This document shows, piece by piece, positions 34,299 through 49,858 of a DNA stretch of 64,000 nt; within the stretch, counting starts at the first letter, position 1, and every line of letters begins with the position of its first letter. The stretch spans positions 304,055 through 368,054 of the IMG/VR virus record IMGVR_UViG_3300005537_000001; one strand, given 5' to 3'. The notes under the pieces are model-generated. The model had not been told where the DNA came from and searched no databases. It worked only from the letters and a program-made list of their open reading frames with translations. The position numbers and the translations under genes were made by a program.

Positions 34299-34327
34299 TT
34301 TACATTGGAGACAATACTGTGTATAAT
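34299..34327 (+). promoter_or_regulatory. Sigma70-type early/middle promoter
   Basis: gTTTACA-17 bp-TATAAT with TGTG before the -10 (T4 early-like). Confidence 0.8.
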
Positions 34328-34368: not shown

Positions 34369-35088
34369 TTGACAAAAATAAAACGCGAAAAAAGCACTAG
34401 TACTAAGGGCCATTACGTCACAAATGGAGTACTTCTTCCAGCTGTAATTGAAGCTAAAGGTCTCGGAAAGGTTACCGATAAGCTTATTCGGATGATCACG
34501 ATGATCGCCGAGCGGTATTCCAGGAAGGCCAATTTTGTTGGGTATTCGTTTCGCGAGGACATGGTCTCCGCCGCGGTAATGAACCTGTGCAACAACGCGC
34601 TTAAATTCAATCCTGAGAAGTCATCCAACCCCTTCTCATTCTACACGACTGCTATCCATAACTCATTCCTGCAGTACATGGCAGATGAGAAGAAGCACCG
34701 CAACATCCGCGACGCGCTTCTGATTGACGCTGGCTCCAACCCCTCCTTTAACTTCATGAACGGTGGCGTCGACAAGACGGAAGAAGTTGAGATACGAGAA
34801 TCGGATGAGATAATCATTCTAGACCAGAAGGAAATGTCTCCGGAGGATCTCGTTGTTGATCGGACTCCGGATGTCGTTGAATCACCAGTTCCAGCAAAAT
34901 CGCGTCATCCCAAGTGGGCTGCTCGTGAGCCAGGCCCAGTCATTACCTACAAGCCAAGCCAGTATACGGTTGATCCAATTACCAACAAGGTAACGATCAA
35001 TCCAATTCCAGAGCCGGTTGAAAAGAAAAAAGCTAAATCTGCTCCCAAGAAAAAGAAAGCTGTTAAGAAACCAGCTAAGAAGAAATAA
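34369..35088 (+). CDS. Late-transcription sigma factor, T4 gp55-like, with Lys-rich C-terminal tail
   Basis: HYV.N..L; IAE.YSRK.NF.GYSFREDM; KFNPEKSSNPF.FYT...HNSFL.....EKK; TTG start with AGGAG SD. Confidence 0.9.
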   Translation: MTKIKREKSTSTKGHYVTNGVLLPAVIEAKGLGKVTDKLIRMITMIAERYSRKANFVGYSFREDMVSAAVMNLCNNALKFNPEKSSNPFSFYTTAIHNSFLQYMADEKKHRNIRDALLIDAGSNPSFNFMNGGVDKTEEVEIRESDEIIILDQKEMSPEDLVVDRTPDVVESPVPAKSRHPKWAAREPGPVITYKPSQYTVDPITNKVTINPIPEPVEKKKAKSAPKKKKAVKKPAKKK

Positions 35089-35091
35089 CTC

Positions 35092-36147
35092 ATGCGAGTA
35101 ATTAGGGTTGGTGCCCTTAACAAGGTAGCGATGTTCACGGACATCCACTTTGGCAAAAAGAATAACTCCATACAGCACAATCAAGATTGTCTTGATTTCG
35201 TCAATTGGTTCTGTGATAAAGTTAAGAAGGATAGCGATATCAGCCATGTTGTTTTCATGGGTGATTTTTTTGAGAATCGAAATTCGGTCAACGTAATGAC
35301 TATGAATTTTGCCTATGAGGCTCTCAGTAAGCTTAATTCTCTCTGTCTTCCAATTTACATTATCGTAGGCAATCATGATCTTTACCACAGAGAAAATCGA
35401 AAAGTGTTCTCAACAAAAGTATTTGAGGAGTTTGAACACGTAAATCTTGTTAGCGAACCTCAAGTACTTGCCGATAAAATTCTTCTAGCTCCGTTCATGT
35501 TCAAGGAAGAATATCCACTTTTGGTGCAGTACAACAATTTGCCATATTGGATGGGACACTTCGAATTCAGAAACTTCATCGTCACTGGAACCGACAGAGT
35601 TATGGAGCATGGTCCCGAGCACAACTCGTTTGATGGGCCGAAGTTCATTTTCTCTGGACACTTTCACAAGCGACAGGCGAAGGACAACATCGTGTACATT
35701 GGTAATTGCTTTCCAATGGATTACGGTGATGCTTGGGACGACGCGCGTGGTATGTGCGTTCTAGATACAAAAAATGATAACGTTGATTTCATCGATTGGA
35801 TAGATTGTCCAAAGTACCGTAAGGTTAAACTATCCGACGTGCTAAATCAAGCTGAAATCAACTACCCACCTAAATGCCGCGTGCGCTGCACGATCGACAC
35901 AGAGATTGGTTATTCTGAAGCTCAGCAGCTTCGTGAGGAAATTACCAAGCTGATGGATCTCCGTGAATTTTCCCTTGAAGAAAATTTGTATGAAAAGAAA
36001 GATGCCATCGCCGGTGATAATGAGATAATCGATGATTTCGACTTAAGCTCGCTCAATGACGCTGTGGTGCGCATGCTTAAAACGGGTGTTACCGGAACTT
36101 CTACCATCGACGCCGAACGACTTATCGATATCTATCAGAGACTATAA
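35092..36147 (+). CDS. Recombination endonuclease subunit gp47 (Mre11/SbcD-like)
   Basis: FTDIHFG, GDFF, GNHD, GHFE, SGHFH metallophosphoesterase motifs. Confidence 0.92.
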   Translation: MRVIRVGALNKVAMFTDIHFGKKNNSIQHNQDCLDFVNWFCDKVKKDSDISHVVFMGDFFENRNSVNVMTMNFAYEALSKLNSLCLPIYIIVGNHDLYHRENRKVFSTKVFEEFEHVNLVSEPQVLADKILLAPFMFKEEYPLLVQYNNLPYWMGHFEFRNFIVTGTDRVMEHGPEHNSFDGPKFIFSGHFHKRQAKDNIVYIGNCFPMDYGDAWDDARGMCVLDTKNDNVDFIDWIDCPKYRKVKLSDVLNQAEINYPPKCRVRCTIDTEIGYSEAQQLREEITKLMDLREFSLEENLYEKKDAIAGDNEIIDDFDLSSLNDAVVRMLKTGVTGTSTIDAERLIDIYQRL

Positions 36148-36150
36148 CGC

Positions 36151-37908
36151 ATGAGCGCACCACTTACGCTACTTACGCTTGTCATCCGAAATTTTCTGAG
36201 CTTCGGCAACTCGATGACAACCATCGAGCTAACAGGTGATGGCACGACGCACATTACCGGCGAAAACCTAGATACCAATTCCAACAATGGAGCTGGAAAA
36301 ACGACGATCATCAACGCGATCTGCTACGCGCTTTACAACAAGCCATTCGATAACATCTCGCTGCAGCGCCTCATCAATTCAACCAATAACCTCAAAAATA
36401 CATTAATGGAGGTTAAGCTTACCTTCACCAAGGGTGAGGATGAGTACACAATTCACCGCACTCGTGGTGAAACCTTCAACATCGCCATCACCAAAAATGG
36501 TGATGACATAACGCTTGATTCCGTTACCGAAAATGACAAGGCGATTGAAGAAATTATCGGCATGAGCTATGAGCTCTTCACCAAGATCGTTGTGTTCTCC
36601 GGTAATTCCACGCCATTTTTACAGATGCCGGTATCGCAGCAGCGACAGCAGATCGAAGAACTCTTTAACATCACCCTGCTTTCTGAGAAGGCGGTGAAGC
36701 TCAAGGAAATCATCAAGTCGACTGAAAATGCCATCGCGATTCAGGATGCTGTAATCAAGGAACAAGAAGCGCAAATAACGCTGTACAACAGGCAGCTAAC
36801 CGATGCTGAGGCGCGAATTGATCGCTGGGAAAACGATCGCTTCGCGCAGATTGAAGCGTTAACTTCTGATTTGCAGCTTATCGAATTCCTGAAAACAGTC
36901 AACATGGACGAGGAAAAAGAACTTCACGCGCTAACCGATCAGCTAGAAAAAACGCTGTCACCTCTCAACAGTTCAGTTGCGATAGCTAAACGGGATCGTT
37001 CTACCGCGGCAACCGACGTTCGAAAGCTTACAGAGGAGCTTGAACATCTCATAGTTGCAAAATGTCCATACTGCCTACAAAAATACGAGAGCGCCGATAA
37101 AAAAATTCTAGAGAAGCAGGAGCTGTTCAACAAGAAGCAAGATCGCGTTATCGCGCTTGATGAAAAAATTAGGGTGCAGCAGGGTGAGATAGACAGCATT
37201 AACGAGCAGATCGGAGCTGCCCGCTCCATCATGAAATTTACTTCTTTCGCAGAAGCGGTTCGCGCAGAATCAGCCGCGATCGGCGCTCAGCAGAAAATTA
37301 ATGATCTAAGCGAAGCTATCAACCCCCATATTGACGCCTATGAGCAGCTTAAAAATACCGCGATTAAGAAGGCGTCGTACGCTGAGCTTGATTTTCTCAA
37401 GAAAGATCTTGAGCATCAGCAGTTTTTACTCAGGTTGTTGACAGATAAGAATTCATTCATCCGGCGCCGCATCATTAACAGGACAATTCCATTCCTAAAT
37501 AGTAGATTGATTCACTACACCAAGGAGCTTGGGCTCCCGCACGTAGTCAAGTTTGACGATGATATGAGCTGCACGGTTTCAGAGTATGGGAGAGAGCTGG
37601 ACTTCGGTAACCTTTCGAGCGGCGAGAAGAAAAGAGTAAACCTCTCACTGTCGCTCGCTTTTCGAGATGTTCTTCATCACCTGCACTCACGAGTTAACTG
37701 CCTCTTCATCGACGAAATTGACGGATCACTCGACGGCCCAGGCGTCGAAAGCGTGTTCCGCCTCCTCAAGCAGAAGTCTCGAGATGAGGGACTTGGATTG
37801 TGGATCATCTCGCATAGACCAGAAGCCGTTGGTCGTTTTGATCGTTACTTAATCGTACGAAAGGAAAATGGTTTCTCCCGCATCGTAGACGAAAAGGAAG
37901 CAGCATGA
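36151..37908 (+). CDS. Recombination ATPase subunit gp46 (Rad50/SbcC-like)
   Basis: NFLSFGN, Walker A NGAGKT, zinc hook CPYC, signature LSSGEK, Walker B LFIDE, IISH. Confidence 0.93.
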   Translation: MSAPLTLLTLVIRNFLSFGNSMTTIELTGDGTTHITGENLDTNSNNGAGKTTIINAICYALYNKPFDNISLQRLINSTNNLKNTLMEVKLTFTKGEDEYTIHRTRGETFNIAITKNGDDITLDSVTENDKAIEEIIGMSYELFTKIVVFSGNSTPFLQMPVSQQRQQIEELFNITLLSEKAVKLKEIIKSTENAIAIQDAVIKEQEAQITLYNRQLTDAEARIDRWENDRFAQIEALTSDLQLIEFLKTVNMDEEKELHALTDQLEKTLSPLNSSVAIAKRDRSTAATDVRKLTEELEHLIVAKCPYCLQKYESADKKILEKQELFNKKQDRVIALDEKIRVQQGEIDSINEQIGAARSIMKFTSFAEAVRAESAAIGAQQKINDLSEAINPHIDAYEQLKNTAIKKASYAELDFLKKDLEHQQFLLRLLTDKNSFIRRRIINRTIPFLNSRLIHYTKELGLPHVVKFDDDMSCTVSEYGRELDFGNLSSGEKKRVNLSLSLAFRDVLHHLHSRVNCLFIDEIDGSLDGPGVESVFRLLKQKSRDEGLGLWIISHRPEAVGRFDRYLIVRKENGFSRIVDEKEAA

Positions 37909-38576: not shown

Positions 38577-39320
38577 ATGGGCGGTATCTATTTTATTACA
38601 TGTAGCGTAAATGGAAAAATCTATGTTGGATCCGCTAAGGATTTGCATACTCGATGGGCTGAACATGTATCTCTTCTTAATCTACAGAAGCACTTCAATA
38701 GGAATCTTCAAAGAGCATGGTTGAAGTATGATAAAGATTCATTCACATATCGAATCCATGAACAGCTTGGTGAATACAATAAGAAGTTTTTCTTTGAAAG
38801 AGAAAACTTTTGGATGGATAAGCTAAGAGCTGAAGGAAAGCGATTATTCAACATAGCTAGAGCTCAGGGTGGCTGGGGTGAAGAAACAAAACTTCGTGTA
38901 ATGGAGATAGGCGCAAAGATAGGTGCCACACTTAGAAAAATGTATAATGCTATGTCTGATGAAGAGCGTAAGCAAAAATATGGGCATCGAAAAGATATCC
39001 CGTTATCTGAGGCACATAAAGTTCACCTAAGGAATTTTTGGAAAGATAAGCCAAAATCTGAAACTCATAAAGCAAATATGCGGATTGGTCAGCGGGAAAA
39101 TGTTTCTCCGGAAAGAAAGAAACAACGGAAAAAGAATATGTCGATAGTTGGGAAGAGTAGAAGAGGCTCAATCCCATCAAATGCGAAACCAATACTTTTT
39201 AGAGGTGTTGAATACTCATCAGCCCCAGAATGTAAAAGAAAAACTGGGTTCACAATGCATCAAATATTATTAGAAGTATATGGACCAAATTATAGAAAAA
39301 CCAAAAAAGAAGCGGCTTAA
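38577..39320 (+). mobile_element. Free-standing GIY-YIG homing endonuclease with NUMOD3-like repeats
   Basis: GIYFI......KIYVGS....RW..H...L....H.N..LQ.AW.KY; SE.HK repeats; AT-rich. Confidence 0.9.
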
Positions 39321-39885
39321 TTCCAAGAGTAAAGGTTCCGGGTTCGAGGGACTTGTCGCTAACAAGCTCTCCGCGGCCCTAGCGCCGCTAAAATTCATTC
39401 GCACCCAGGGTTCCGGAGCTCGGGTTGGTGGCAAAAACTTTGAGACGCTAGGTCAAATGTTCGGTGAGGACGCGCTTAAGCTGTTTGTTGGAGATGTTGT
39501 TCCGGTTAATGAAAAGAATGCCGGCGTTACATTCCTCCACGCGATTGAGTGCAAGTCATACAAGACACCTGATAACTTTCCAGCTCTAGTTTCAGGCAAC
39601 AGCAATCTATTCAAGTGGATGAAAGAAGCTGAGGACGATGCGGTTAAGGTGAAGCGCAACCCGCTTCTTATCTTCAAGTGGAACAACACTCCTATCTTCG
39701 TAGCGCATTCAGCACAGCTCCGTCATCCCGTTCGCCTCTCCCTTCAACAGGATGCCAAGGTAATCTACATCAACTATCTGGATGATCTGCTAAAGTACCC
39801 AAAGTTTTGGTATGATGTACTAGAGCAACCTGTAATTCCCAATATTGATCAACGTGAAAACTACTCTTTACAGGATAAAAAATGA
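39280..39885 (+). CDS. PD-(D/E)xK nuclease, Holliday junction resolvase-like
   Basis: SK.KG..FE..VA..LS; R..GSGA; GDV; IECK.Y; PLLIFK. Confidence 0.75.
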   Translation: MDQIIEKPKKKRLNSKSKGSGFEGLVANKLSAALAPLKFIRTQGSGARVGGKNFETLGQMFGEDALKLFVGDVVPVNEKNAGVTFLHAIECKSYKTPDNFPALVSGNSNLFKWMKEAEDDAVKVKRNPLLIFKWNNTPIFVAHSAQLRHPVRLSLQQDAKVIYINYLDDLLKYPKFWYDVLEQPVIPNIDQRENYSLQDKK

Positions 39886-40142
39886 ATCTCAAAAAAGCAA
39901 AATCAATTCGAGCCCTTGTGTTACAATTAGTCAAGAAAGAAGTTATCAAGGGTCCATGGGCACAATATGGAACCGTCACTCACTCGAAGGAATTTCCGAC
40001 TGGAAAGTTTGACGATAAGGGTGAGAAGGTAATGGATAAAGTCGAGCACAAGCAGATCGTTCTAAATCCAAACTGCCCCAAAGGTGTCTATCGTCGCATG
40101 AAGAAGACATCAATGGCATCAGTTTTAGCTGGGCAAACATGA
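39882..40142 (+). CDS. Hypothetical protein
   Basis: Coupled ORF; KA..IR...L...C.KG.YR..KK pattern. Confidence 0.65.
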   Translation: MNLKKAKSIRALVLQLVKKEVIKGPWAQYGTVTHSKEFPTGKFDDKGEKVMDKVEHKQIVLNPNCPKGVYRRMKKTSMASVLAGQT

Positions 40143-40345: not shown

Positions 40346-40544
40346 AGAACAAACATTCACCGACACAGCCTCTACTGATTATGCCGGATACAACGCATGG
40401 GAAGCTAGATGTCGTGAGCTGAAGCTCAGCGGTCCTCATAGGGTATCGAATACTACCATATGGCAGTTTACGGACGAAAATGGAACTGCCGCCATCTACA
40501 ATACTTTATCCGGCGGTGGAGTGATTTTTAGAAGAGAATCATGA
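40338..40544 (+). CDS. Hypothetical protein
   Basis: Overlap-coupled ORF. Confidence 0.55.
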   Translation: MIEEQTFTDTASTDYAGYNAWEARCRELKLSGPHRVSNTTIWQFTDENGTAAIYNTLSGGGVIFRRES

Positions 40545-41047
40545 TAGAAATAAAAGCGCCAAATAGAGTCCAAGGACATTACAATTCCTGGCTGAAAATT
40601 TTTCTTGCCGGATCAATTGAGATGGGTAAGGCAGAAGCGTGGCAAGCTCGAGTAGCGGCGGACATGAAAGATTATCATGTTGTTCTTCTCAATCCAAGAC
40701 GCGATGATTGGGACAACAGCTGGGTGCAGTGCATTGAAAATGCCCAATTTAACGAACAGGTAACTTGGGAACAGGATCAAATTGCTGATGCTGACATAGT
40801 TATTTTCTATTTCGATCCAAAAACGATGTCTCCGATTACCCTGATGGAGCTTGGATTCACTTTAGGCAAAGGCTGCCAGAGCGTTATCGTGTGCTGCCCA
40901 GAGGGATATGAACGGAAGGGTAACGTGGATATCATGTGCGCCAGAGCTCCGAAAAATTACGTAACTCTCGTAGAAACATACGACGATCTCATCAAATCAC
41001 TAAAAGACCATCTAAAGTATGCTGACCTTCCATCCGCTGGATGTTGA
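40541..41047 (+). CDS. Nucleoside 2-deoxyribosyltransferase-like protein
   Basis: IFLAGSI....A..WQ; NPRR.DW; QV.WE...I..AD; SPITL.ELG; VCCP.GY.RKGNV. Confidence 0.85.
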   Translation: MIEIKAPNRVQGHYNSWLKIFLAGSIEMGKAEAWQARVAADMKDYHVVLLNPRRDDWDNSWVQCIENAQFNEQVTWEQDQIADADIVIFYFDPKTMSPITLMELGFTLGKGCQSVIVCCPEGYERKGNVDIMCARAPKNYVTLVETYDDLIKSLKDHLKYADLPSAGC

Positions 41048-42296
41048 TCGCGAGCTAGACAGATCTAATCCTCTCTTCGTTGGTAACTTTTTCGACCTAA
41101 AGGGTATGTGGTGGAGGAAGCGGAAGCAGCGTCAGGGGTTGATCATATCGGTTGCCGTCGCGTGGTATCGCATCATGAAGAGCAATCCGGCTGCGGCGGG
41201 GTTTGTCGAGAAAGAAACGCTCATAACCAACCTTACCAATCAAGTCAAGGATGCCAGAGTAATCCTTGATAAATTTTTCAACGTAACGAAGATCGGCTTC
41301 AACTTCAACAATGGTAATAAAAGCCCTTCAACCATAACGCCGAAGCGACTTGGGAAGCGGATGCTAACCGCCATCAAGGAAATTCTCAAGGAAATTTATT
41401 TTTGCCCAGGCGCTCAACCAGTAGACGAAGCGCTTACAAAAAGCTACGTCCACGTGCAGAAAAATGCGAGTCACATTCTAGCTCGACTGAAGGAAGAAAA
41501 TCGTGAGGACCTCATTCCTCCGGTATCCTGGATACTGAGACAGGACTCTCCCATCACCTTTTACTTTAGGGCGAGCGGCGCCTTGCAGCAGCGCGACACG
41601 TCAGTGTGGCCGGTGCGCGCCATCGAGATGTGGCCAGGCTGGCTGCGCAAGGCGTTGTTCGGCACCACTGTAGATATTGAAAACGCGTATTCACAATTTC
41701 TAGTTGAGCATCTTAAGCTAAAATATGAAAACAGCCCGCTGCAGCTTAAGCTGCGGTATCCGGATGTCCTTCGTAGCGACAGCGATAAGCTAAACTTCAG
41801 GCTAGAGATCTTGCAGCTGCTCAAGCTTGAAAACAGCTACGATAACATGAAATACGTAAAGCGCATCTTGATGTCGTTGGCCAATGGTTCAAATGCATCC
41901 GCCGCGCTGATGACGAATGGAAGCGGTATGTCTGAAACCGTGGCGCTCGTCAATGAAGCCAATCCTAAGCTGCTTCCAACTGAACTCGCTGTTCTTGGAA
42001 ACCGGCTTTCCAGCATCGTGAAGCAGTTTAGGGCAGCTCGGCGTGATCTCTGCCTGTACCTCTTGAAGGAAAAACCGACGCGCGCAAATCAAAAGAAAAT
42101 ATTCAAGATGTACATGGCGTGGGAACGGACAGCTCGATACAAGATATGGAATGCAGCTGGACAGTCAGGCTTGCACCTCCACGACGGCGTTGATGGAATC
42201 GTAACGGACAAGTCAGACAGTGAGCTTACCAGCCATATAGCACGACAAACTTCGCTGCGCGTAAGCGTCAGCACACCACTAGCAGAGGCAGCATAA
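41019..42296 (+). CDS. Family-A-like (TV-Pol-type) nucleic acid polymerase, stand-alone
   Basis: Ordered motifs: WP..LR..LF, motif A VDIENAY, motif B VKRILMSLANG, Y..WE, motif C LHLHDG. Confidence 0.55.
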   Translation: MLTFHPLDVDRELDRSNPLFVGNFFDLKGMWWRKRKQRQGLIISVAVAWYRIMKSNPAAAGFVEKETLITNLTNQVKDARVILDKFFNVTKIGFNFNNGNKSPSTITPKRLGKRMLTAIKEILKEIYFCPGAQPVDEALTKSYVHVQKNASHILARLKEENREDLIPPVSWILRQDSPITFYFRASGALQQRDTSVWPVRAIEMWPGWLRKALFGTTVDIENAYSQFLVEHLKLKYENSPLQLKLRYPDVLRSDSDKLNFRLEILQLLKLENSYDNMKYVKRILMSLANGSNASAALMTNGSGMSETVALVNEANPKLLPTELAVLGNRLSSIVKQFRAARRDLCLYLLKEKPTRANQKKIFKMYMAWERTARYKIWNAAGQSGLHLHDGVDGIVTDKSDSELTSHIARQTSLRVSVSTPLAEAA

Positions 42297-42688
42297 TGAT
42301 AACTGTAAAACTTCAAGAGCTTAATAAGAAAAATCTCAATGGGCGCATCTATCCTACAGCCGTAGTAGAAAAAGCGATTGAAAGCGCTAAGGAGCGTATC
42401 GAAAACGGTAATTTTTGGGGAACTCTTGGTGTACCGCAAGGTCCATCAATTCCACTTGACTTGATATCGCATAGAGTGCTTGCGCTAAGAATCGAGGGTG
42501 ACTATTTGGTCGGCGATGTAAAAATTTTAGATACGCCCATGGCTCGAACGTATCAGGAGATAGAAGAAAGTAAGCTATATTCTGTCACGTGGCGCCCGAT
42601 GGGTACAGGAAAGGTAGATAATGATGGTGTTATAACAGATTATAACATCATGGGAATAACAGCAATTCCTGCAACTGACGCAGCTTAA
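42296..42688 (+). CDS. Prohead-protease (gp21) paralogue lacking the catalytic His and Ser
   Basis: Aligns to 49241-49858: KNLNGRIYP, I.L..[IV]SH, G..[KR]IL.TP, GTG.V...G; GELNHP becomes GTLGVP and GVSSRG becomes TWRPMG. Confidence 0.75.
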   Translation: MITVKLQELNKKNLNGRIYPTAVVEKAIESAKERIENGNFWGTLGVPQGPSIPLDLISHRVLALRIEGDYLVGDVKILDTPMARTYQEIEESKLYSVTWRPMGTGKVDNDGVITDYNIMGITAIPATDAA

Positions 42689-42750: not shown

Positions 42751-42948
42751 TTAATAAACAGGTGACGGTGATTTAGCTGCTATTTCCAAACGCTTGTTGA
42801 TGAATTCAACCGCCAACTCGCGTTCTGCCTGAGACATACCGAGCACGTCATGATAGCTCCATGCTCCTCTAGAAAAGTAAGATATTTCAATCGCCGATCT
42901 TACTATTCCCTTTATCTCGGAACCAAGCTTCATGATGACTCGGTTCAT
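42751..42948 (-). CDS. gp51-like small baseplate/tail assembly chaperone; possibly also the -1 frameshift extension of the upstream gene
   Basis: Y..RG.WSY..VL.MS..ER....EFI.KR motif; own ATG at 42948; frame is open back through the upstream T-TTT-TTC site. Confidence 0.7.
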   Translation of the reverse strand: MNRVIMKLGSEIKGIVRSAIEISYFSRGAWSYHDVLGMSQAERELAVEFINKRLEIAAKSPSPVY

Positions 42949-42971
42949 AGCGTCCAGATCCCCGGCCCTTA

Positions 42972-43793
42972 TTACTCTGTGAAAAAAGACACTGGGTTGA
43001 TTGGTATTTCTACGGCATAGTCGGTGCCACAATCCTTGCACTTACATGTCCATTTCAAATTTGATCCCCAGTCATTGATCTTTTCAATCTTTTCAGCTAT
43101 TCTGTTTACCACCGGTGATGGTATCTTCCTAATCCATTCTTCAATCTTGACTGGATCAGAAATCCATGCAGCCCCCGCGCTGACGGATTCAATAACTCCA
43201 AGCAGCATCATAATCAGATTTCTTTGCTGATCTTCAACAGTTATTTCTTTCTTGTTCTCGTTTGCCTTAATAAGGTCAAGCACCTGCTGGTACTTGTTAG
43301 GGCGCAGCTTAACCACTTGACCGGTTGGTAGGTTGACCGTATATTGCGACGTAATTACGGTTGGGTCAATTATCTTCATGCCGTTGATCAATTCTTCCAC
43401 GTTTGCAACGTATGAATAATCATTGAACGGTTTTATCTTGCCGTTAAACTCACCGCAGCCGTGATGGGCCATGAATTCGTATGACGCCCCATACGTAACG
43501 GTTCTTAGGAAGAGCATTATCGCGTCAACATCCTTCGAAAGCAGCTCAGATGGCTTCTTAACTCCCTTTATGCACGTCATGAACACCGTGTTAACCGCGG
43601 CTCCGCTGAACAGCTGATCTGGGTTCTTCATGTTGATTTCATCCAAGGCCGACATGGGGTAGACGTGTACCTCACCGTCCTTGACGTTTTCATCCAGCTC
43701 ACCGTTGTGGTAAAAAATACCGCGTGAAGGAAGTTGGAAGATTCTGCCTGGAAGCTTAAGCCCCTCAAGCAGTGGGTTTGACTCTGTCGTCAT
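42972..43793 (-). CDS. Baseplate hub assembly chaperone, gp26-like
   Basis: NPL; LPSRG.FY; V.PMSA.DEI; D.DAI...LR..TYG; C-terminal CKDC and terminal P..FF. Confidence 0.8.
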   Translation of the reverse strand: MTTESNPLLEGLKLPGRIFQLPSRGIFYHNGELDENVKDGEVHVYPMSALDEINMKNPDQLFSGAAVNTVFMTCIKGVKKPSELLSKDVDAIMLFLRTVTYGASYEFMAHHGCGEFNGKIKPFNDYSYVANVEELINGMKIIDPTVITSQYTVNLPTGQVVKLRPNKYQQVLDLIKANENKKEITVEDQQRNLIMMLLGVIESVSAGAAWISDPVKIEEWIRKIPSPVVNRIAEKIEKINDWGSNLKWTCKCKDCGTDYAVEIPINPVSFFTE

Positions 43794-43887: not shown

Positions 43888-46788
43888 ATGGCAAGATTAG
43901 ATCCCTCTCAGCAATCTTTATTTGACGCTCTAACCAAGGCGTGGGGTCGAGGTCCAGGTGATTCCGGACAAGGTGGTGGTTCAGCGTCTATCGGCGTTAC
44001 AGAATTTGTAAAGGCCGTTAAAAATTCCAAAGACAAGCTTGAAAAGCTTTCTACATCGATAGAGAAGCTGCTGGTTGAAAACGGCGATCAAGAGGATGCG
44101 GTGGAAAAGGCAACCGCCGTCCTAATCAAATCAACCCAATCATTTGGCGATCTTGACGCCGAGGTGCGAGAGCTACTTGGCAAGAGCCTACCGCAGGCGC
44201 GCGCGTATATCGAGAGCGTTTCACGGGCCAGCAAGGATCTTACTACCGGTCTTGGAAAAACAATCCGCAACCAATCGTTATTTGGTGCCGCGCTTCTAGA
44301 AAGTCACGCTGAGGTACAGCGCGGCACGCTAGCATATTCAAACATGCTTGGTAACATGTATGATGCAGCAAATGGTCTAAGCGAAGGTCTTCTGCGTCAG
44401 GCAAACTTGTGGGATGAAAATTCGAATTCGATAAGAAAAAATCTTGATCCACAGGATTTTGCTAGACTTCACGTTGCGATTGGTCAAGCTCAAACTGCCG
44501 TAGTTGAAAATTTGGGCGGCATCGAGGGTATGGGAAAACTATCAGCCCTCTCGGCGCTTAGTCAAGAACAATTCATCAATACTACCAGCGCGAACAGCGA
44601 GGCCGGTAAAAAGCTTCAATCGCAGCTGATCGCAGCGGCCCTTCAGCTTGAAGCGCTTGGGCAACATTTGGAGATACCTGGTGTTGGCGGTGCTACTGAA
44701 AAGGTCACGCTAACTCAGCATGGGCAAGTTAATCAAGCTGCCATAGATGCTCTGCAGGGAGATGCTGGTAAGCTGCAGGCGCTGACCCAAGCTCTTCTCA
44801 AGAATGTAGCTGAAAACAACGCCGCAAGCAGGAAATTCGCTGAAATAGCAAAAAATTCAAGCACGCTCGTAGGTGGTTTACTTTCTCACATAACAAGCAT
44901 CGGATCCCATTTAACTGGTTTAGAAGTTGCTGCTGAATTTGCAAAGCGTGGACTATTCTTGCTTGGCGATACCGCGACAATTAAGAAATCTTTCGACCTG
45001 ATGAAAGAAGGAGTGATGGGGGCGGTCAAGCAGATCGCCGACTTCAACAATGCCGGCGTCCCAGCTTCGTTCAAAAATGTTACGCTGGAATCATTCAAGC
45101 TGGGTATGTCCTTCTCAGAAACCGTTGAGTTCATGCAACAAAACAAACGGCAGATCGCGCTGTTCGGTGGTAGCTTTGACAGCTTGACCGATAACTATAA
45201 GGCAACCTTCCAAAAATTTGGCATAACGATGAAGCAGGGCGCTGAGGTAGTTGGCCCAGCATTTGAAGCTGCCATCGCCACCGGGATAAATGTCAAGAGC
45301 GGTGATCAAGTTAACAAGTTTACGGATTCACTACTTTCATCATTTAGCGATCTGCGCGGTGCCGTCAACGTTACGGCTGGAGAATACGCTAAGCAGACAG
45401 CCGCCCTCATCGCCTCATCGGAAGTTCAAGGCAACATCTTGGGCTTGGATAAAGAAGCATCAATCCAGCGCGTCAAGGATATCTTTCAACAGCAAAAATA
45501 CTATGTGTCTCAGGGGTTATCCCTGGAGGCAGCTAACGATCTTATCAAGGCCCAAAACGCTCAGAAGAATGAAGCTGTAAAGGATCAACTTGCCAATGCT
45601 GCAAAGTTGGCTCTCGGCGCGCAAATCGCCGGACTCAACGGTCAACAGGTAGCCCAGATACAAAGACTGTATCTCAAGGGCGCCGCTAGAACTAAGGAAG
45701 AAAATGTCCAGTTTGATAAGCTGAAACAGCAAAGAGCCGCGGGGTTAGCTGGTAGAACCGCGCGGGCCAACGCTACCGGTGATATTGGTACAATTCTCGG
45801 CACTCAAGTTGGAAATCAATTTGTAGAAAATCTCACTGGTTCGGCCGCCGCCGGTCAGCAGGCAGCCAACACTGAGGCTGCATCGGCTAAAGCTGGAAAT
45901 CAACTCACGGATGATCAGCTAGCTCAGGCTGCTGCAGCAGCAAAAGGCAGCGAGTCTATCGCTGGATTAGGTAACGTTGCTAATACCTTAACATCTGTAT
46001 TTTCGAATCCCCTAACCAAGTCAATATTTGGCGCTACCGGTGGCCTGATTGGTCTCGCGCTTCAATCGCTGTTAACAGCTCGTTCCCTTGGACAAATCGG
46101 TGGAAGCTTTGGCAACCTCGGTGGTCTATTCAAGAAGCTGTTCGGTGGAGGTGCGGCTACAGCTGCGGTAGAAGGAGCTGAAAAGGTTGTTGAATCATCT
46201 GGCGCCAAGGCGGCAGAAAAGGTAGCTGAAAAAGGTGGACTAAAGGTCGCCGAGAAGATCGGTGCAAAAACCATCGGTAAATCCCTCCTAAAAGCTATCC
46301 CAGGTATTGGTTTGATCGCCGCCCTTGGCTTCGGCGCCCAGAGAGCCTTCGGCGGAGATTTCAAGGGAGCAGGTTTGGAAGTCGCTTCGGGTGCCGCGAG
46401 CCTTATTCCAGGAGTCGGCACCGCAGCATCTCTAGCTATTGACGCTGGTATAGCAGGTCGAGACTTCGTTAACGCGAGTGAGGCAGCTGGCAAACCTCCA
46501 ATCCCTGGTCAGCCTGGCGCAGGTGAGACTGCAGTAAATACTACAGGTACGACTGGTGAAGCATCTCCAACCGATAAATCATGGGTTGTTCAGGATCCTA
46601 CGTCTCATGATTATTTGAGCGCGATCGCCGACAGCATGATTCAAGCCGTAAAGCTTCTTCAGATGATATCCGATAACGGTAATCCTGAAGCTAGCAACGT
46701 GGTCGTAGAGCGGCTTAAGGCTGGTGGCGTCAAGAATATACCAACCGCTACCTCATATACGACTGGCAGGCAGATGGCTGCAGCTTAA
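43888..46788 (+). CDS. Tape-measure-like protein (966 aa)
   Basis: Ala/Gly/Gln-rich and helical; C-terminal K.IPG.G...G..R...GD..GA.L...G.AS.IPG.GT motif; next to the gp26-like chaperone. Confidence 0.65.
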   Translation: MARLDPSQQSLFDALTKAWGRGPGDSGQGGGSASIGVTEFVKAVKNSKDKLEKLSTSIEKLLVENGDQEDAVEKATAVLIKSTQSFGDLDAEVRELLGKSLPQARAYIESVSRASKDLTTGLGKTIRNQSLFGAALLESHAEVQRGTLAYSNMLGNMYDAANGLSEGLLRQANLWDENSNSIRKNLDPQDFARLHVAIGQAQTAVVENLGGIEGMGKLSALSALSQEQFINTTSANSEAGKKLQSQLIAAALQLEALGQHLEIPGVGGATEKVTLTQHGQVNQAAIDALQGDAGKLQALTQALLKNVAENNAASRKFAEIAKNSSTLVGGLLSHITSIGSHLTGLEVAAEFAKRGLFLLGDTATIKKSFDLMKEGVMGAVKQIADFNNAGVPASFKNVTLESFKLGMSFSETVEFMQQNKRQIALFGGSFDSLTDNYKATFQKFGITMKQGAEVVGPAFEAAIATGINVKSGDQVNKFTDSLLSSFSDLRGAVNVTAGEYAKQTAALIASSEVQGNILGLDKEASIQRVKDIFQQQKYYVSQGLSLEAANDLIKAQNAQKNEAVKDQLANAAKLALGAQIAGLNGQQVAQIQRLYLKGAARTKEENVQFDKLKQQRAAGLAGRTARANATGDIGTILGTQVGNQFVENLTGSAAAGQQAANTEAASAKAGNQLTDDQLAQAAAAAKGSESIAGLGNVANTLTSVFSNPLTKSIFGATGGLIGLALQSLLTARSLGQIGGSFGNLGGLFKKLFGGGAATAAVEGAEKVVESSGAKAAEKVAEKGGLKVAEKIGAKTIGKSLLKAIPGIGLIAALGFGAQRAFGGDFKGAGLEVASGAASLIPGVGTAASLAIDAGIAGRDFVNASEAAGKPPIPGQPGAGETAVNTTGTTGEASPTDKSWVVQDPTSHDYLSAIADSMIQAVKLLQMISDNGNPEASNVVVERLKAGGVKNIPTATSYTTGRQMAAA

Positions 46789-46813: not shown

Positions 46814-48448
46814 ATGGCATCTTGGGTAGATTATTGGCGAATCGTCACTCCCGCGTCGCGCAAGGCACAATATCAAAATCCTAACATCAACCTAGATGAT
46901 GGTATGGATCTCAATACAGCTGGGTACGCTTCATTCTCCACCGTAGCTTGGTTCTCGAACCTTCTCAAGGGAGCCACGGCCCGCCTGCAGCGCTACAAGC
47001 AGTACGATGCCATGGATTACGGTGACGTTGGTAGGGCCTTAGACATTATTTCTGAAGAACTTTCTAACGAGGACAAGCGCACCGGATTGCCGTTCATCAT
47101 TGATTATCAGACAGAAGAAAATCAACAGATTTCTGAAACTACGGTAACGACAGTTCGTGCCGCCCTGCGCCATTGGTCAAAATTTCACTCACTTGAAAAG
47201 CGCGTGTTTAACGTGGCGCGAGTGCTGTGCAAGTATGGTGATTGTTTTTTCCGCAAAACATCAGATACAAAGAAATGGGAATACGTAGATCCAACCCGCG
47301 TGATAGGTATTGAAATTAACGCTGAGGGTGAAAAGAAAGCATATCACATTCGTCCCTCCAGCTTCTCGAACTCAGTTGCCAGCGCCAAGGGAACAGCAAA
47401 GGGCGTAAGCTCATCGATGGAGTCAGTCGAAATTTCTCCAGCTTCAGCTATAATCCACTTCACGCTGTCGGACGACATGGGCGAGAGCGCGCCGTTTGGA
47501 TTGTCAATTCTTCAGGCAGCGTTTAAGGATTTCCAAAAGCTGACGATGCTGGAAGATGCGGCAATTATCTACCGCATAGTGAGAGCTCCAGAGCGCCGAG
47601 TATTCTACATTGACGTAGGCAACATGCCGCCGCAGCGCGTTAAGCAGTACATTGAGCAGGTGCGAAACGACATTAGGCAAAAGCGCCAGCCCAATACCGC
47701 CAACGCGAATCAAACTGATTCTCAGTACAACGCCGAAAGCATTCAAGAAGATTATTTCTTCCCAACGACCGCGAGTGGTCGCGGTAGCCGCGTTGAAACC
47801 CTCCCCGGCGGTGCAACGTGGGAAATTCCAGAGCTTGATTACTTCCTCAAGAAGGTGTTTAGAGCTCTCCGAGTACCTTCGTCGTACATGATTGGACAGG
47901 AGGCAGCCCCGCCGGGTGCGCAGTTCAACGACGGAAAGGTTGGCGTCGCTTACATGGAAGAGCGCATCTTCGCGAACTTCGTAATTCGCCTGCAGCAGTG
48001 CGTTGAGACAACCTTCGATGAGCAGTTTAAGACGTATCTCAAGGTAACTGGGATCAGCGTTGACCCTGAACTTTTCAAGCTTACGCTACCAGAACCACAG
48101 AACTTCGCTCTGTATCGTCAAGCCGCGCTTGACACCGATCTCATCGCGTCGTTCAAGGCGATTGAGGAAACCGGTTATCTTTCCAAGAGAATGATGATTG
48201 AGCGCTTCCTCGGACTTACCAAGGATGACATCGCGGCAAATGAGGTACAGATTAGACAGGAACGTGGCATCAAGGATGGTCTAAACATAGATGTCATACA
48301 GCAGATCTATGACCCAGCCGTTTATGAAAATCGCGACAAGCTTAAGGTAGATGATTCCGGTGAAGCCCCGCCTCCAGAGGCTGGCGGTGAAGAGACACCA
48401 GCTCCAGAAGCCGGAGGCGGTGAAACTCCAGAGACACCAGCAGCTTAA
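46814..48448 (+). CDS. Portal vertex protein gp20
   Basis: RY.QYD.MD; PFG.SIL; LEDA.IIYRI.RAPERRVFYIDVGNMPP; EDYFFP; GRGSRVETLPGG; ALRVPSSY. Confidence 0.95.
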   Translation: MASWVDYWRIVTPASRKAQYQNPNINLDDGMDLNTAGYASFSTVAWFSNLLKGATARLQRYKQYDAMDYGDVGRALDIISEELSNEDKRTGLPFIIDYQTEENQQISETTVTTVRAALRHWSKFHSLEKRVFNVARVLCKYGDCFFRKTSDTKKWEYVDPTRVIGIEINAEGEKKAYHIRPSSFSNSVASAKGTAKGVSSSMESVEISPASAIIHFTLSDDMGESAPFGLSILQAAFKDFQKLTMLEDAAIIYRIVRAPERRVFYIDVGNMPPQRVKQYIEQVRNDIRQKRQPNTANANQTDSQYNAESIQEDYFFPTTASGRGSRVETLPGGATWEIPELDYFLKKVFRALRVPSSYMIGQEAAPPGAQFNDGKVGVAYMEERIFANFVIRLQQCVETTFDEQFKTYLKVTGISVDPELFKLTLPEPQNFALYRQAALDTDLIASFKAIEETGYLSKRMMIERFLGLTKDDIAANEVQIRQERGIKDGLNIDVIQQIYDPAVYENRDKLKVDDSGEAPPPEAGGEETPAPEAGGGETPETPAA

Positions 48449-49197: not shown

Positions 49198-49240
49198 ATC
49201 TGTGAATTCAATGTGTTCAGGTTATCTGACGGGAGACTCT

Positions 49241-49858
49241 ATGTCAAAGCTTATTCCTCTGTATGAGTATTTCAACCCAGTTGAAGCTCAATTGGTTGAG
49301 TCTCGGGACGCGCAGAAGAATCTTTATCTAGCTGGTAGAATGATGGCGGGTGAGGCAAAGAACCTCAACAACCGCAGCTATCCAGTTACCGAAATTGCTA
49401 AGGCGGTTGGTCTCATCAACCAACGAATTAAGGAAGGTGCCTTCATCGCTGGTGAGCTGAATCACCCAGACAACCTTTCAATCGATCTAAAGAATGTTTC
49501 ACACATCATCATCGAAGCATGGATGGATGGAAACAACGCCGTCGGTAAGTGCAGAATTTTGAACACCCCATCTGGACAAATAGTTCAGAGCCTCATTGAG
49601 GGTGGAATGAAGCTTGGAGTTTCTTCGCGTGGAACTGGAAACGTAAACCACAACGGCATAGTTGAGGATTTTTCGTTCGTAACGCTCGACATCGTAGCCC
49701 AACCATCCGGTCCAGGCTGCTACCCAGATGTAGTTCGTGAAGGTTTGGAACAGCCAAAGATTCGCACCCTCGCCGAAATGGCGGTGGAAGATGTCAAGGC
49801 GCAAAAATTCTTGACGCGTGAAGTGTTCAAGTTCATCGCATCACTGACGAAGAAGTAA
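49241..49858 (+). CDS. Prohead core protease gp21
   Basis: N.N.R.YP, GELNHP (His), VSH.I, IL.TP.G, LGVSSRG.G (Ser), D.VA.PS; ATG 49241 has a GGGAG SD. Confidence 0.93.
   Translation: MSKLIPLYEYFNPVEAQLVESRDAQKNLYLAGRMMAGEAKNLNNRSYPVTEIAKAVGLINQRIKEGAFIAGELNHPDNLSIDLKNVSHIIIEAWMDGNNAVGKCRILNTPSGQIVQSLIEGGMKLGVSSRGTGNVNHNGIVEDFSFVTLDIVAQPSGPGCYPDVVREGLEQPKIRTLAEMAVEDVKAQKFLTREVFKFIASLTKK

What the first reader, a model, noticed from the sequence alone, without database searches (positions are those of the whole stretch)
41019..42296. Stand-alone family-A/TV-Pol-like polymerase in a T4-type phage
Seen: motifs in the correct order, WPGWLRKALF, VDIENAY (A), VKRILMSLANG (B), YMAWE, LHLHDG (C), with no exonuclease or helicase domain. 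Established: T4-like phages replicate with a family-B polymerase, and the TV-Pol group are minimal relatives of PolA and T7 RNAP proposed to act as primases. Inference: an accessory primase, RNA polymerase or nucleotide-oligomer synthase. It overlaps the upstream deoxyribosyltransferase-like gene, so the two may form a nucleotide-handling pair.
Basis: partly seen in the sequence, partly recalled or inferred. Interest (0 to 1): 0.6.

Follow-up and report, generated by a model that had tools for sequence, protein, structure and literature searches.

The report
Minimal family-A-fold polymerase in jumbo T4-like phage
A 425-residue gene in a 368-kb soil T4-like phage encodes a stripped-down polymerase with the fold of DNA polymerase I and T7 RNA polymerase; it belongs to an unannotated family kept at one fixed genome position in related phages that already have a full replication machinery, so it is an extra polymerase whose job is unknown.

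Summary
ORF 41019-42296 (+) is a real 425-aa gene, and all five quoted motifs sit on the family's most conserved columns. It has no Pfam, PHROG, NCBIfam, PADLOC or PDB sequence match. It belongs to an isolated, metagenome-only family: more than 135 clusters at 90% identity, and 51 representatives among 1.84 billion proteins.

A confident AlphaFold2 model (pLDDT 89.8) matches only family-A polymerases and T7-type RNAPs at the top of an exhaustive PDB search (Pol theta Z 11.2, Klenow 10.1, mtRNAP 8.4, T7 RNAP 7.8; residues ~131-425). Its nearest predicted structures are TV-Pol-D5 helicase fusions of virophages. Residues 1-130 form a domain with no recognisable fold. There is no exonuclease or helicase.

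R192, R210, D219, K281, G290 and E369 are invariant in 145 members, and H388 and D389 nearly so, which implies an active enzyme. The phage also encodes PolB, a DnaB-like helicase, a Toprim primase and a gp55-like sigma, so this polymerase is accessory.

The gene always lies between the gp47/gp46/resolvase block and the baseplate hub. The NDT-like neighbour is present in 7 of 10 loci, and a small basic protein in 9 of 10.

Sequence profiles do not place it in PolA, TV-Pol, divPolA1 or divPolA2. The most likely role is short-patch or priming DNA synthesis linked to recombination. An RNA-synthesising role is not excluded.

The parts
41019..42296 (+). Gene for the 425-aa minimal family-A-fold polymerase (the finding)
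   Evidence: ORF; family of >135 clusters; AF2 pLDDT 89.8; PDB fold matches to PolA and T7-type RNAPs, Z up to 11.2
41019..41408 (+). N-terminal domain (aa 1-130), alpha/beta, no recognisable fold; invariant R38, Q39, F86, F87, G93
   Evidence: Folded alone, pLDDT 88.4; best PDB Z 4.6, with only weak winged-helix-like rows; BFVD best E 0.11
41466..41540 (+). Two short helices (aa 150-174) in the position of a truncated thumb
   Evidence: DSSP of the model, H150-159 and H163-174; PDB alignments start at about aa 131-140
41553..41609 (+). Beta-hairpin (aa 179-197) carrying invariant R192 (plus D193, S195, W197, P198); counterpart of the PolA 'GRLSS.DPNLQNIP' hairpin
   Evidence: Strands E179-186 and E192-197; R192 145/145; E. 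coli Pol I segment read (correspondence by inspection)
41670..41696 (+). Motif A (aa 218-226): palm strand ending in invariant D219, then a helix; Y/F224 and Q226 conserved
   Evidence: E217-220 then H223-235; D219 145/145, Q226 143/145, aromatic at 224 in 138/145
41856..41891 (+). Motif B (aa 280-291): invariant K281 and G290, M285, N289 where T7 RNAP has Y639 and Klenow has Y766
   Evidence: aligned to T7 RNAP K631...Y639-G640-S641
42111..42137 (+). Helix before motif C (aa 365-373) with invariant Y365, W368, E369, R373
42171..42197 (+). Motif C (aa 385-393): beta-turn-beta with H388-D389-G390
   Evidence: E385-387 and E390-392; conservation; aligned to T7 RNAP H811-D812
40541..41047 (+). 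Upstream NDT-like gene (PF15891), overlaps the polymerase gene by 29 nt
   Evidence: E 1.8e-31; present next to the family gene in 7 of 10 loci
39882..40142 (+). Small, highly basic protein (86 aa; 18 K+R), the most consistently linked neighbour
   Evidence: Homologues 1-3 genes upstream of the polymerase gene in 9 of 10 loci, 8 of them strong; no family match
39280..39885 (+). PDDEXK_15 putative Holliday-junction resolvase (replaced by Endonuclease VII in some relatives)
34369..37908 (+). Head of the same-strand block: gp55-like late sigma (34369-35088), gp47 SbcD-like (35092-36147), gp46 SbcC-like (36151-37908)
   Evidence: sigma70-like promoter at 34299-34327
42296..42688 (+). 130-aa prohead-protease-like small ORF; its start overlaps the polymerase stop (TAATG)
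42751..43793 (-). Conserved downstream boundary: 74-aa ORF (42751-42975) and T4 baseplate hub gene (42972-43793)

Best explanation
The gene encodes an active, minimal right-hand nucleotidyl transferase of the PolA/T7-RNAP structural superfamily. It has an RRM-type palm with two invariant Asp (D219, D389), a full-size helical fingers insertion carrying the motif-B Lys (K281), a template-contacting beta-hairpin Arg (R192), a vestigial thumb, no proofreading domain, and a novel 130-aa N-terminal domain. It is an accessory enzyme, because the phage has a complete T4-type replisome core and a gp55-type sigma. Inferred mechanism: template-dependent, low-processivity DNA synthesis coupled to recombination-dependent replication or repair. 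This could mean extending invading 3' ends, filling gaps, or initiating de novo as a prim-pol in the way the TV-Pol member CcPol does. It would be co-expressed with gp47/gp46 and the junction resolvase, possibly helped by the small basic neighbour. Shown: the gene, the family, the fold, the invariant catalytic set, the accessory status, the synteny. Inferred: activity, a DNA (rather than RNA) product, and the link to recombination. My probabilities: active family-A-fold polymerase about 0.85; DNA repair, recombination or priming role about 0.4-0.45.
For: Fold: AF2 pLDDT 89.8, pTM 0.78. In the exhaustive PDB search, ranks 1-14 are all PolA, Pol theta, Pol nu, Pol gamma or T7-type RNAPs, with Z 11.2-6.1 and 226-260 residues aligned over aa ~131-425. 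Foldseek gives PolA with prob 0.97-1.0. Ferredoxin-like domains align to aa 215-418, so the strand bearing D219 and the hairpin bearing D389 lie in one RRM-like unit. Nearest predicted structures are TV-Pol-D5_N/DUF5906 fusions and a stand-alone 461-aa bacterial cluster (TM 0.59 over aa 3-425). Selection: 12 columns stay invariant down to 16-22% identity, among them R192, R210, D219, K281, G290, E369, H388, D389; the same holds in 145 members. Accessory status: PolB, DnaB-like helicase, Toprim primase, gp55 homologue. Context: in 10 of 10 loci the gene sits on the same strand downstream of gp47-gp46-resolvase, tightly packed or overlapping. An aromatic residue (Y/F224, 138/145) lies five residues after D219, where PolAs have the Glu steric gate and T7 RNAP has Gly (the register is inferred). 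That favours dNTPs. Precedent: CcPol-MP, a TV-Pol member, is a dNTP-using primase-polymerase, and a shortened thumb reduces processivity (10.1101/2022.12.02.518924).
Against: No sequence-level homology to PolA or TV-Pol. The only marginal profile signal is to T7-like RNAPs (P about 0.012), and motif B looks RNAP-like (K..M...A.GS). The motif-B Tyr is replaced by Asn, and the RxxxK Arg is absent, so nucleotide handling may be unusual. Synteny with recombination genes may simply reflect T4-like core gene order. T4 itself needs no such enzyme. There are no expression data. The partner test gave no verdict.
Confidence: 0.55

Rival explanations
1. It is a miniature single-subunit RNA polymerase or RNA-primer synthase, closer to T7/mitochondrial RNAPs than to DNA Pol I. 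It initiates de novo on DNA, for example at origins or R-loops, or for a few special transcripts.
For: Motif B matches T7 RNAP residue for residue at K631, M635, L637, A638, G640 and S641. The only profile signal is to T7-like RNAPs (P 0.012-0.014 against 0.15-0.41 for reversed controls, with motifs B and C in register), while PolA profiles give nothing. mtRNAP and T7 RNAP are among the top fold hits (Z 8.4, 7.8). The N-terminal domain has faint winged-helix-like matches. For the analogous divPolA2, the authors also raised an RNAP role (PMC11348598).
Against: The P value is marginal and motif A is out of register. Asn replaces Y639, the residue that reads the 2'-OH in T7 RNAP. An aromatic residue sits at the presumed steric-gate position. 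The protein is half the size of any known T7-type RNAP, with no room for a specificity loop or promoter-binding domain. DNAPs score higher than RNAPs in the fold search. The phage has a gp55-type sigma and a Toprim primase. PF00940 does not match.
Confidence: 0.2
2. It forms a nucleotide-handling pair with the NDT-like enzyme. It would either be a polymerase specialised for non-canonical nucleotides, whose pool the NDT-like N-glycosidase or transferase shapes, or a non-templated oligonucleotide synthase used in defence or counter-defence.
For: The NDT-like gene (PF15891) is adjacent, often overlapping or abutting, in 7 of 10 loci, including the most distant homologue at about 22-26% identity. 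The polymerase-like protein and the NDT-like protein diverge at similar rates, somewhat faster than the hub and resolvase. The altered motif B (Asn for Tyr) could reflect unusual substrates. Specialised PolAs for modified DNA exist among the fold hits (YerA41 and phiLo entries).
Against: NDT is missing in three clades that keep the polymerase (L004/L005, L021, L022), and its order relative to the small ORF flips, so it is dispensable. There are no PADLOC matches. The conserved template-contacting hairpin Arg and full fingers argue for templated synthesis. No PolA-fold enzyme is known to make signalling oligonucleotides.
Confidence: 0.12
3. It is a catalytically dead polymerase relic kept for a structural or DNA-binding role.
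For: There is no sequence match to any polymerase family. The thumb is truncated. The motif-B Arg and Tyr are lost.
Against: Both metal-binding Asp, the motif-B Lys, the hairpin Arg and the His before the second Asp are invariant across 145 members and in relatives at 16-22% identity. That pattern is expected only if catalysis is selected.
Confidence: 0.04

Closest known systems
TV-Pol family (Iyer, Abhiman & Aravind 2008, PMC2579912), including CcPol of SCCmec (CcPol-MP primase; 10.1101/2022.12.02.518924)
   Same: A minimal family-A catalytic core without nuclease. It has a short helical thumb, a beta-hairpin with an invariant Arg, an RRM palm with two invariant Asp, and fingers inserted after the first palm strand. 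There is an optional N-terminal globular domain. It co-exists with the host or virus's regular replicative polymerase. The nearest predicted structures are TV-Pol-D5 helicase fusions of virophages and polinton-like viruses.
   Different: No profile-level similarity: the deep search of 1.84 billion proteins reaches no TV-Pol, and nothing is found in the Ma-LMM01 genome. The Arg of RxxxK is absent. Asn stands where Tyr does in motif B, and motif C reads HDG. The N-terminal domain is alpha/beta rather than all-helical. The context is a fixed locus in a T4-like core genome, not a D5 helicase or an integrase/resolvase mobile element.
divPolA2 (and divPolA1) of Caudoviricetes (PMC11348598)
   Same: A second, strongly diverged PolA of about 430 aa in phages that replicate with PolB. 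It has a conserved palm, no exonuclease, no normal thumb, and an unknown N-terminal globular domain. Fold hits include both DNAPs and mt/N4 RNAPs, and the function is unknown.
   Different: No sequence relationship: the family profile finds nothing in genomes carrying divPolA2 or divPolA1, and hhalign to the divPolA2 representative AUR84708 gives probability 0.2%. divPolA2 keeps PolA-like strings (IQNLP, VFDE) that this family lacks. divPolA2 sits in variable neighbourhoods, whereas this gene is strictly syntenic.
Family-A DNA polymerases (Pol I Klenow/Taq, Pol theta, Pol nu)
   Same: Best solved-structure matches: Z 11.2-8.9, about 250 residues aligned. The same order of hairpin, helix, motif A strand, fingers, motif C hairpin.
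   Different: Fails PF00476. No profile similarity. About 295 aa against about 410 aa for the polymerase domain. No 3'-5' or 5'-3' exonuclease.
T7-like single-subunit RNA polymerases
   Same: Motif B is nearly identical in pattern, and motif C reads H-D plus a small residue. There is a marginal profile alignment and fold Z of 7.8-8.4.
   Different: Half the size. Y639 is replaced by Asn. It has no promoter-recognition elements. PF00940 is not matched.

Membership tests
Family-A DNA polymerase (Pfam DNA_pol_A, PF00476) | Scores above the curated Pfam threshold or shows profile similarity to PolA | tested here: not met
   No Pfam hit for the protein or for 41 relatives. PF00476 finds nothing in the genome at E<=1. 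The family HMM does no better than shuffles against E. coli Pol I and T7 DNAP. hhalign against an 80-sequence PolA profile gives P 0.4-0.6.
Family-A DNA polymerase (Pfam DNA_pol_A, PF00476) | Right-hand polymerase-domain fold superposable on Klenow, Taq or Pol theta | tested here: met
   VIA-align Z 11.2 (Pol theta), 10.4, 10.1 (Klenow), 9.4, with 250-258 residues aligned. Ranks 1-14 are all from this superfamily. Foldseek probability 0.97-1.0.
Family-A DNA polymerase (Pfam DNA_pol_A, PF00476) | Two metal-binding Asp (motifs A and C), invariant and juxtaposed in the palm | tested here: inconclusive
   Invariance is met: D219 145/145, D389 144/145. Both lie in one ferredoxin-like unit, aa 215-418, at a strand end and a beta-turn. 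The distance between them could not be measured because no coordinates are available.
Family-A DNA polymerase (Pfam DNA_pol_A, PF00476) | Motif B: R-x-x-x-K-x-x-x-F/Y-x-x-x-Y-G | tested here: not met
   K281 and G290 are invariant with the right spacing. However, position K-4 is I/L/V, K+4 is Met and K+8 is Asn (reference motifs read).
TV-Pol (Iyer et al. 2008) | Thumb of two antiparallel helices, beta-hairpin with an absolutely conserved Arg, RRM palm with two conserved Asp | tested here: met
   H150-159/H163-174, hairpin E179-186/E192-197 with R192 145/145, D219 and D389. Definition taken from PMC2579912.
TV-Pol (Iyer et al. 2008) | Fingers with a conserved Asp and an RxxxK motif | tested here: not met
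   D249 in 120/145 and K281 in 145/145, but there is no Arg four residues before the Lys.
TV-Pol (Iyer et al. 2008) | Sequence-profile connection to recognised TV-Pols | tested here: not met
   The deep hmmsearch returns only 51 representatives, all of this family or unannotated. The profile finds nothing in Microcystis phage Ma-LMM01, a TV-Pol carrier. No TV-Pol Pfam model exists to scan.
TV-Pol (Iyer et al. 2008) | Fusion or linkage to a D5-like helicase, or to an integrase, resolvase or transposase in a mobile element | tested here: not met
   Ten loci show a fixed T4-like core context with no D5 helicase or transposon genes.
T7-like single-subunit RNAP (PF00940) | Pfam/profile membership; Tyr (Y639) in motif B; N-terminal promoter-binding domain and specificity loop | tested here: not met
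   No PF00940 hit (the genome scan had no positive control). hhalign gives only P 0.012. Asn is at the Y639 position in 140/145. 425 aa against 883 aa.
divPolA2 / divPolA1 (PMC11348598) | Sequence similarity to the published representatives | tested here: not met
   The profile finds nothing in MG592441 (divPolA2) or MW353176 (divPolA1). hhalign to AUR84708 gives probability 0.2%.

The most novel reading that the evidence does not exclude
This is an independent, previously undescribed lineage of the PolA/T7-RNAP superfamily: a roughly 300-residue catalytic core with RNAP-like motif B, Asn instead of the sugar-sensing Tyr, and a new N-terminal domain. It initiates nucleic-acid chains de novo (a third kind of phage primase or mini-RNAP) and is a fixed component of the recombination-replication module of soil jumbo T4-like phages, working with a dedicated small basic DNA-binding partner.
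Probability: 0.22. Interest if true: 0.75.

Novelty: new variant of a known kind. Interest (0 to 1): 0.55.

Why it matters
T4-type phages are the textbook case of a self-sufficient family-B replisome. A second, family-A-fold polymerase held at one locus across a broad clade of uncultured jumbo relatives implies a step in their DNA metabolism that T4 does not reveal. With about 295 catalytic residues it is near the lower size limit for this superfamily. It also mixes PolA-like topology with T7-RNAP-like motifs, so its substrate choice (dNTP or rNTP, primed or de novo) could show how DNA and RNA synthesis diverged in this fold. It could also yield a compact enzyme for biotechnology. It adds a third sequence-isolated 'extra PolA' family to divPolA1 and divPolA2, which suggests that accessory minimal polymerases are a recurrent and unexplained feature of large phages.

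Tried and rejected
1. Sequence-family assignment. Pfam, PHROGs, NCBIfam and PADLOC gave nothing for the protein or for 41 relatives. PDB sequence and profile searches returned only noise from designed armadillo repeats.

2. GenBank phages. tblastn with the target and two distant relatives returned no match, even at E<=10. The tool may hide near-identical records, so I read this only as 'no cultured relative seen'.

3. Widened profile (A3) in the word-index search. It returned only the same family, because candidates were capped by core-family words.

4. Single-sequence hhalign to E. coli Pol I, T7 DNAP and T7 RNAP was not significant. The family HMM against these, compared with 900 shuffles, did no better than shuffles.

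5. Targeted profile searches of genomes carrying TV-Pol, divPolA2 and divPolA1 found nothing.

6. Complex prediction of the polymerase with the small basic protein gave no verdict (score 0.00, controls not run). This is not evidence either way. The NDT-like partner was not tested because only one job was allowed.

7. The N-terminal domain, folded alone, has no convincing match in the PDB (Z<=4.6) or BFVD (E>=0.11). Winged-helix rows are only a hint.

8. Expression. Only one DNA run (soil metagenome, the likely source) holds the stretch and there is no RNA run.

9. The T4 late-promoter motif TATAAATA has 0 matches in 64 kb, so timing of expression could not be inferred that way.

10. The hypothesis that the gene replaces a missing primase is rejected: a Toprim primase and a DnaB-like helicase are present.

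11. Rapid arms-race evolution. The protein diverges only moderately faster than the hub and resolvase genes, so this is not a strong signal.
Full report
**1. The observation**

The window is the last 64 kb of a complete 368,054-bp virus record with direct terminal repeats. A soil metagenome is the only public holder. ORF 41019-42296 (+) encodes 425 aa. The upstream ORF 40541-41047 overlaps it by 29 nt and is a PF15891 nucleoside-2-deoxyribosyltransferase-like protein (E 1.8e-31). The window carries T4-type portal, prohead protease, major head protein, gp46/gp47, baseplate hub and a gp55 homologue.

**2. A real but unannotated family**

The protein matches nothing in Pfam, PHROGs, NCBIfam, PADLOC or the PDB by sequence or profile.
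- The word-index search finds more than 135 clusters of about 420 aa, all 'hypothetical', on contigs up to 368 kb.
- An exhaustive HMM search of 1.84 billion representatives finds only 51 at E<=0.001.
- A tail of 361-752-aa proteins is only 16-22% identical but keeps the two acidic motifs.
- No cultured-phage homologue was seen.

**3. Fold**

With a 41-sequence alignment, AlphaFold2 gives pLDDT 89.8 and pTM 0.78. An exhaustive structural comparison with 48,161 PDB representatives puts only family-A polymerases and T7-type RNAPs in ranks 1-14:

| Match | Z |
|---|---|
| Pol theta (252 residues aligned) | 11.2 |
| Taq-derived polymerase | 10.4 |
| Klenow | 10.1 |
| Pol nu | 8.9 |
| yeast mtRNAP | 8.4 |
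| Pol gamma | 8.0 |
| T7 RNAP | 7.8 |
| T7 DNAP | 7.7 |

All of these cover model residues ~131-425. Foldseek agrees (probability 0.97-1.0, E about 1e-2).

Small ferredoxin-like domains align to aa 215-418 (Z 5-6). So the strand ending in D219 and the hairpin carrying D389 belong to one RRM-like palm, and the fingers (aa 223-379) are inserted after the first strand. That is the topology Iyer et al. describe.

Among predicted structures, the nearest are these:
- uncharacterised Caudovirales proteins (E 2e-9)
- virophage and giant-virus 'helicase/primase/polymerase' proteins
- Atlas clusters fused to D5_N/DUF5906, which is the TV-Pol architecture
- a 1,097-member cluster of stand-alone 461-aa bacterial proteins, aligned over aa 3-425 (TM 0.59)

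The N-terminal 135 residues, folded alone (pLDDT 88.4), have no convincing match (PDB Z<=4.6, BFVD E>=0.11). A scatter of winged-helix and replication-initiator proteins is only a hint. There is no exonuclease or helicase.

**4. Active-site conservation and register**

In 145 members, R192, P198, P206, R210, D219, K281, G290, Y365 and E369 are invariant. D389 is 144, H388 is 143 and N289 is 140. Twelve columns remain invariant when the 16-22% relatives are added, among them R192, R210, D219, K281, G290, E369, H388 and D389.

The model places each residue as follows:
- R192 on the second strand of a beta-hairpin
- D219 at the end of a strand followed by a helix
- H388-D389 at a beta-turn

I read the reference motifs from annotated records (T7, E. 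coli). By inspection, the stretch from the hairpin to motif A parallels Pol I: the G-R-L…D-P…I-P hairpin, the R-x-x-F helix, then the strand ending in D.

Statistically the sequence link is weak:
- The family HMM does no better than shuffles against Pol I, T7 DNAP and T7 RNAP.
- An 80-sequence PolA profile gives no hhalign signal (P 0.4-0.6).
- A 79-sequence T7-like RNAP profile gives a long marginal alignment: P 0.012-0.014 over 279-304 columns, against 0.15-0.41 for reversed controls.

That alignment puts motif B (K281/K631, N289/Y639, G290/G640, S291/S641) and motif C (H388-D389/H811-D812) in register, but not motif A.

Three departures from PolA stand out:
- There is no Arg four residues before the motif-B Lys.
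- Met is at K+4 (as in T7 RNAP), and Asn is where all PolAs and T7 RNAP have Tyr.
- An aromatic residue (Y/F224) sits five residues after D219, where PolAs have the Glu steric gate and T7 RNAP has Gly. This register is my inference.

**5. Accessory status**

The genome encodes:
- a family-B polymerase (942-aa ORF)
- a DnaB-like helicase
- an adjacent Toprim primase
- a gp55-type late sigma

PF00476 and PF00940 find nothing (the PF00940 genome scan had no positive control). So the protein does not replace a missing polymerase, primase or transcription system.

**6. Neighbourhood**

The ten distinct loci (the window plus nine related loci) span 26-58% identity to the window protein. In all ten the gene lies on the same strand downstream of gp47, gp46 and a junction resolvase (PDDEXK_15 or Endonuclease VII). 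It lies upstream of a convergently oriented 74-aa ORF, the T4 baseplate hub, a ~1000-aa ORF and the portal. In the window, a gp55-like gene with a strong sigma70-like promoter heads the block.

| Neighbour | Loci | Notes |
|---|---|---|
| NDT-like gene | 7 of 10 | Absent in L004/L005, L021, L022; its order relative to a small ORF flips in L015, L018, L019 |
| Small basic protein (window 39882-40142, 86 aa, 18 K+R) | 9 of 10 (8 strong) | |
| ~200-aa ORF | 9 of 10 | Absent from this phage |

The polymerase-like protein diverges somewhat faster than the hub and resolvase and about as fast as the NDT-like protein. The basic protein is the more consistent companion. A complex prediction for polymerase plus basic protein gave no verdict and counts neither way.

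**7. Comparison with known families**

TV-Pol (PMC2579912). The thumb, the hairpin Arg and the two-Asp palm are met. The RxxxK motif, the sequence-profile link and the D5-helicase or transposon context are not.

divPolA2 and divPolA1 (PMC11348598). The description is strikingly similar: an extra diverged PolA beside PolB, no exonuclease, an unknown N-terminal domain, and a possible RNAP role. There is no sequence relationship, however, and the motifs and context differ.

CcPol-MP. This is the only characterised TV-Pol. It is a primase-polymerase that needs a small DNA-binding partner.

I therefore treat this as a new, sequence-isolated variant of the known kind 'minimal accessory family-A-fold polymerase', and not as a member of any named family.

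**8. Mechanism**

*Best-supported reading.* It is an active, low-processivity, proofreading-free, template-dependent polymerase, co-expressed with the recombination genes. It does short-patch or priming DNA synthesis during recombination-dependent replication or repair.

*Shown:* the fold, the invariant catalytic set, the accessory status and the synteny.

*Inferred:* activity, a DNA product (from the aromatic residue at the presumed steric gate and the CcPol precedent), and the link to recombination (from gene order alone).

*Main rival.* An RNA-synthesising mini-RNAP or primase (about 0.2). It is supported by the RNAP-like motif B and the marginal profile signal. It is weakened by Asn at the Y639 position, the small size, and the presence of gp55 and a Toprim primase.

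*Other rivals.* A nucleotide-handling or signalling role with the NDT-like enzyme (about 0.12), and a dead relic (about 0.04), are less likely.

**9. Limits**

No residue-level structural alignments were available. There are no expression data and no cultured representative.

Noticed in passing
window 39882-40142 (+): An 86-aa, very basic protein (18 K+R) with conserved ends (N-terminal 'MN.KKAK.LR.LV', C-terminal 'DP.C.K..Y..MKK') and a variable-length middle. It is found 1-3 genes upstream of the polymerase-like gene in 9 of 10 related loci and matches no family in any library.
   Followed up: partly
window 42751-42975 (-): A 74-aa ORF (GTG start, 4-nt overlap with the baseplate hub stop) that is highly conserved (59-68% identity, even where the polymerase-like protein is only ~26% identical). 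Its function is unknown.
   Followed up: partly
window 42296-42688 (+): A 130-aa paralogue of the N-terminal part of the prohead protease (phrog_207 E 2e-19; PF03420 weak), in addition to the full protease at 49202-49858. Its start overlaps the polymerase stop (TAATG). Its homologue in L002 sits elsewhere, right after gp46, so it moves within the block.
   Followed up: partly
window 38577-39320 (+): A GIY-YIG homing endonuclease inserted between the gp46-side ORFs and the resolvase. A GIY-YIG gene occupies the same spot in L018, and a NUMOD3 gene interrupts gp47/gp46 in L004.
   Followed up: no
L002 4602-5249, L003 4718-5350, L004 4946-5539, L018 1038-1673 and others: A conserved ~200-aa ORF ending in '...NPRYSGIL' lies between the resolvase and the small basic gene in 9 of 10 related loci. 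It is absent from this phage's whole genome (tblastn) and has no family match.
   Followed up: partly
whole window (1-64000): There is no occurrence of the T4 late-promoter motif TATAAATA (1.85 expected by chance) although a gp55-like sigma is encoded at 34369-35088. The late-promoter consensus of this phage group probably differs from T4's.
   Followed up: partly
window 1441-8337, 13498-22416, 22698-26906 (all -): Three giant ORFs of 2298, 2972 and 1402 aa lie on the minus strand next to baseplate/tail genes. They are presumably fibre or other virion proteins and were not examined.
   Followed up: no
L003 11406-13269: The portal gene of a related phage carries an intein (PF14890 between two Portal_T4 hits). 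The window's portal (46814-48448) does not.
   Followed up: no
window 43888-46788 (+): A 966-aa Ala/Gly/Lys-rich protein lies between the baseplate hub and the portal. It is conserved in position (952-1419 aa) in all related loci and has no Pfam hit on record.
   Followed up: no
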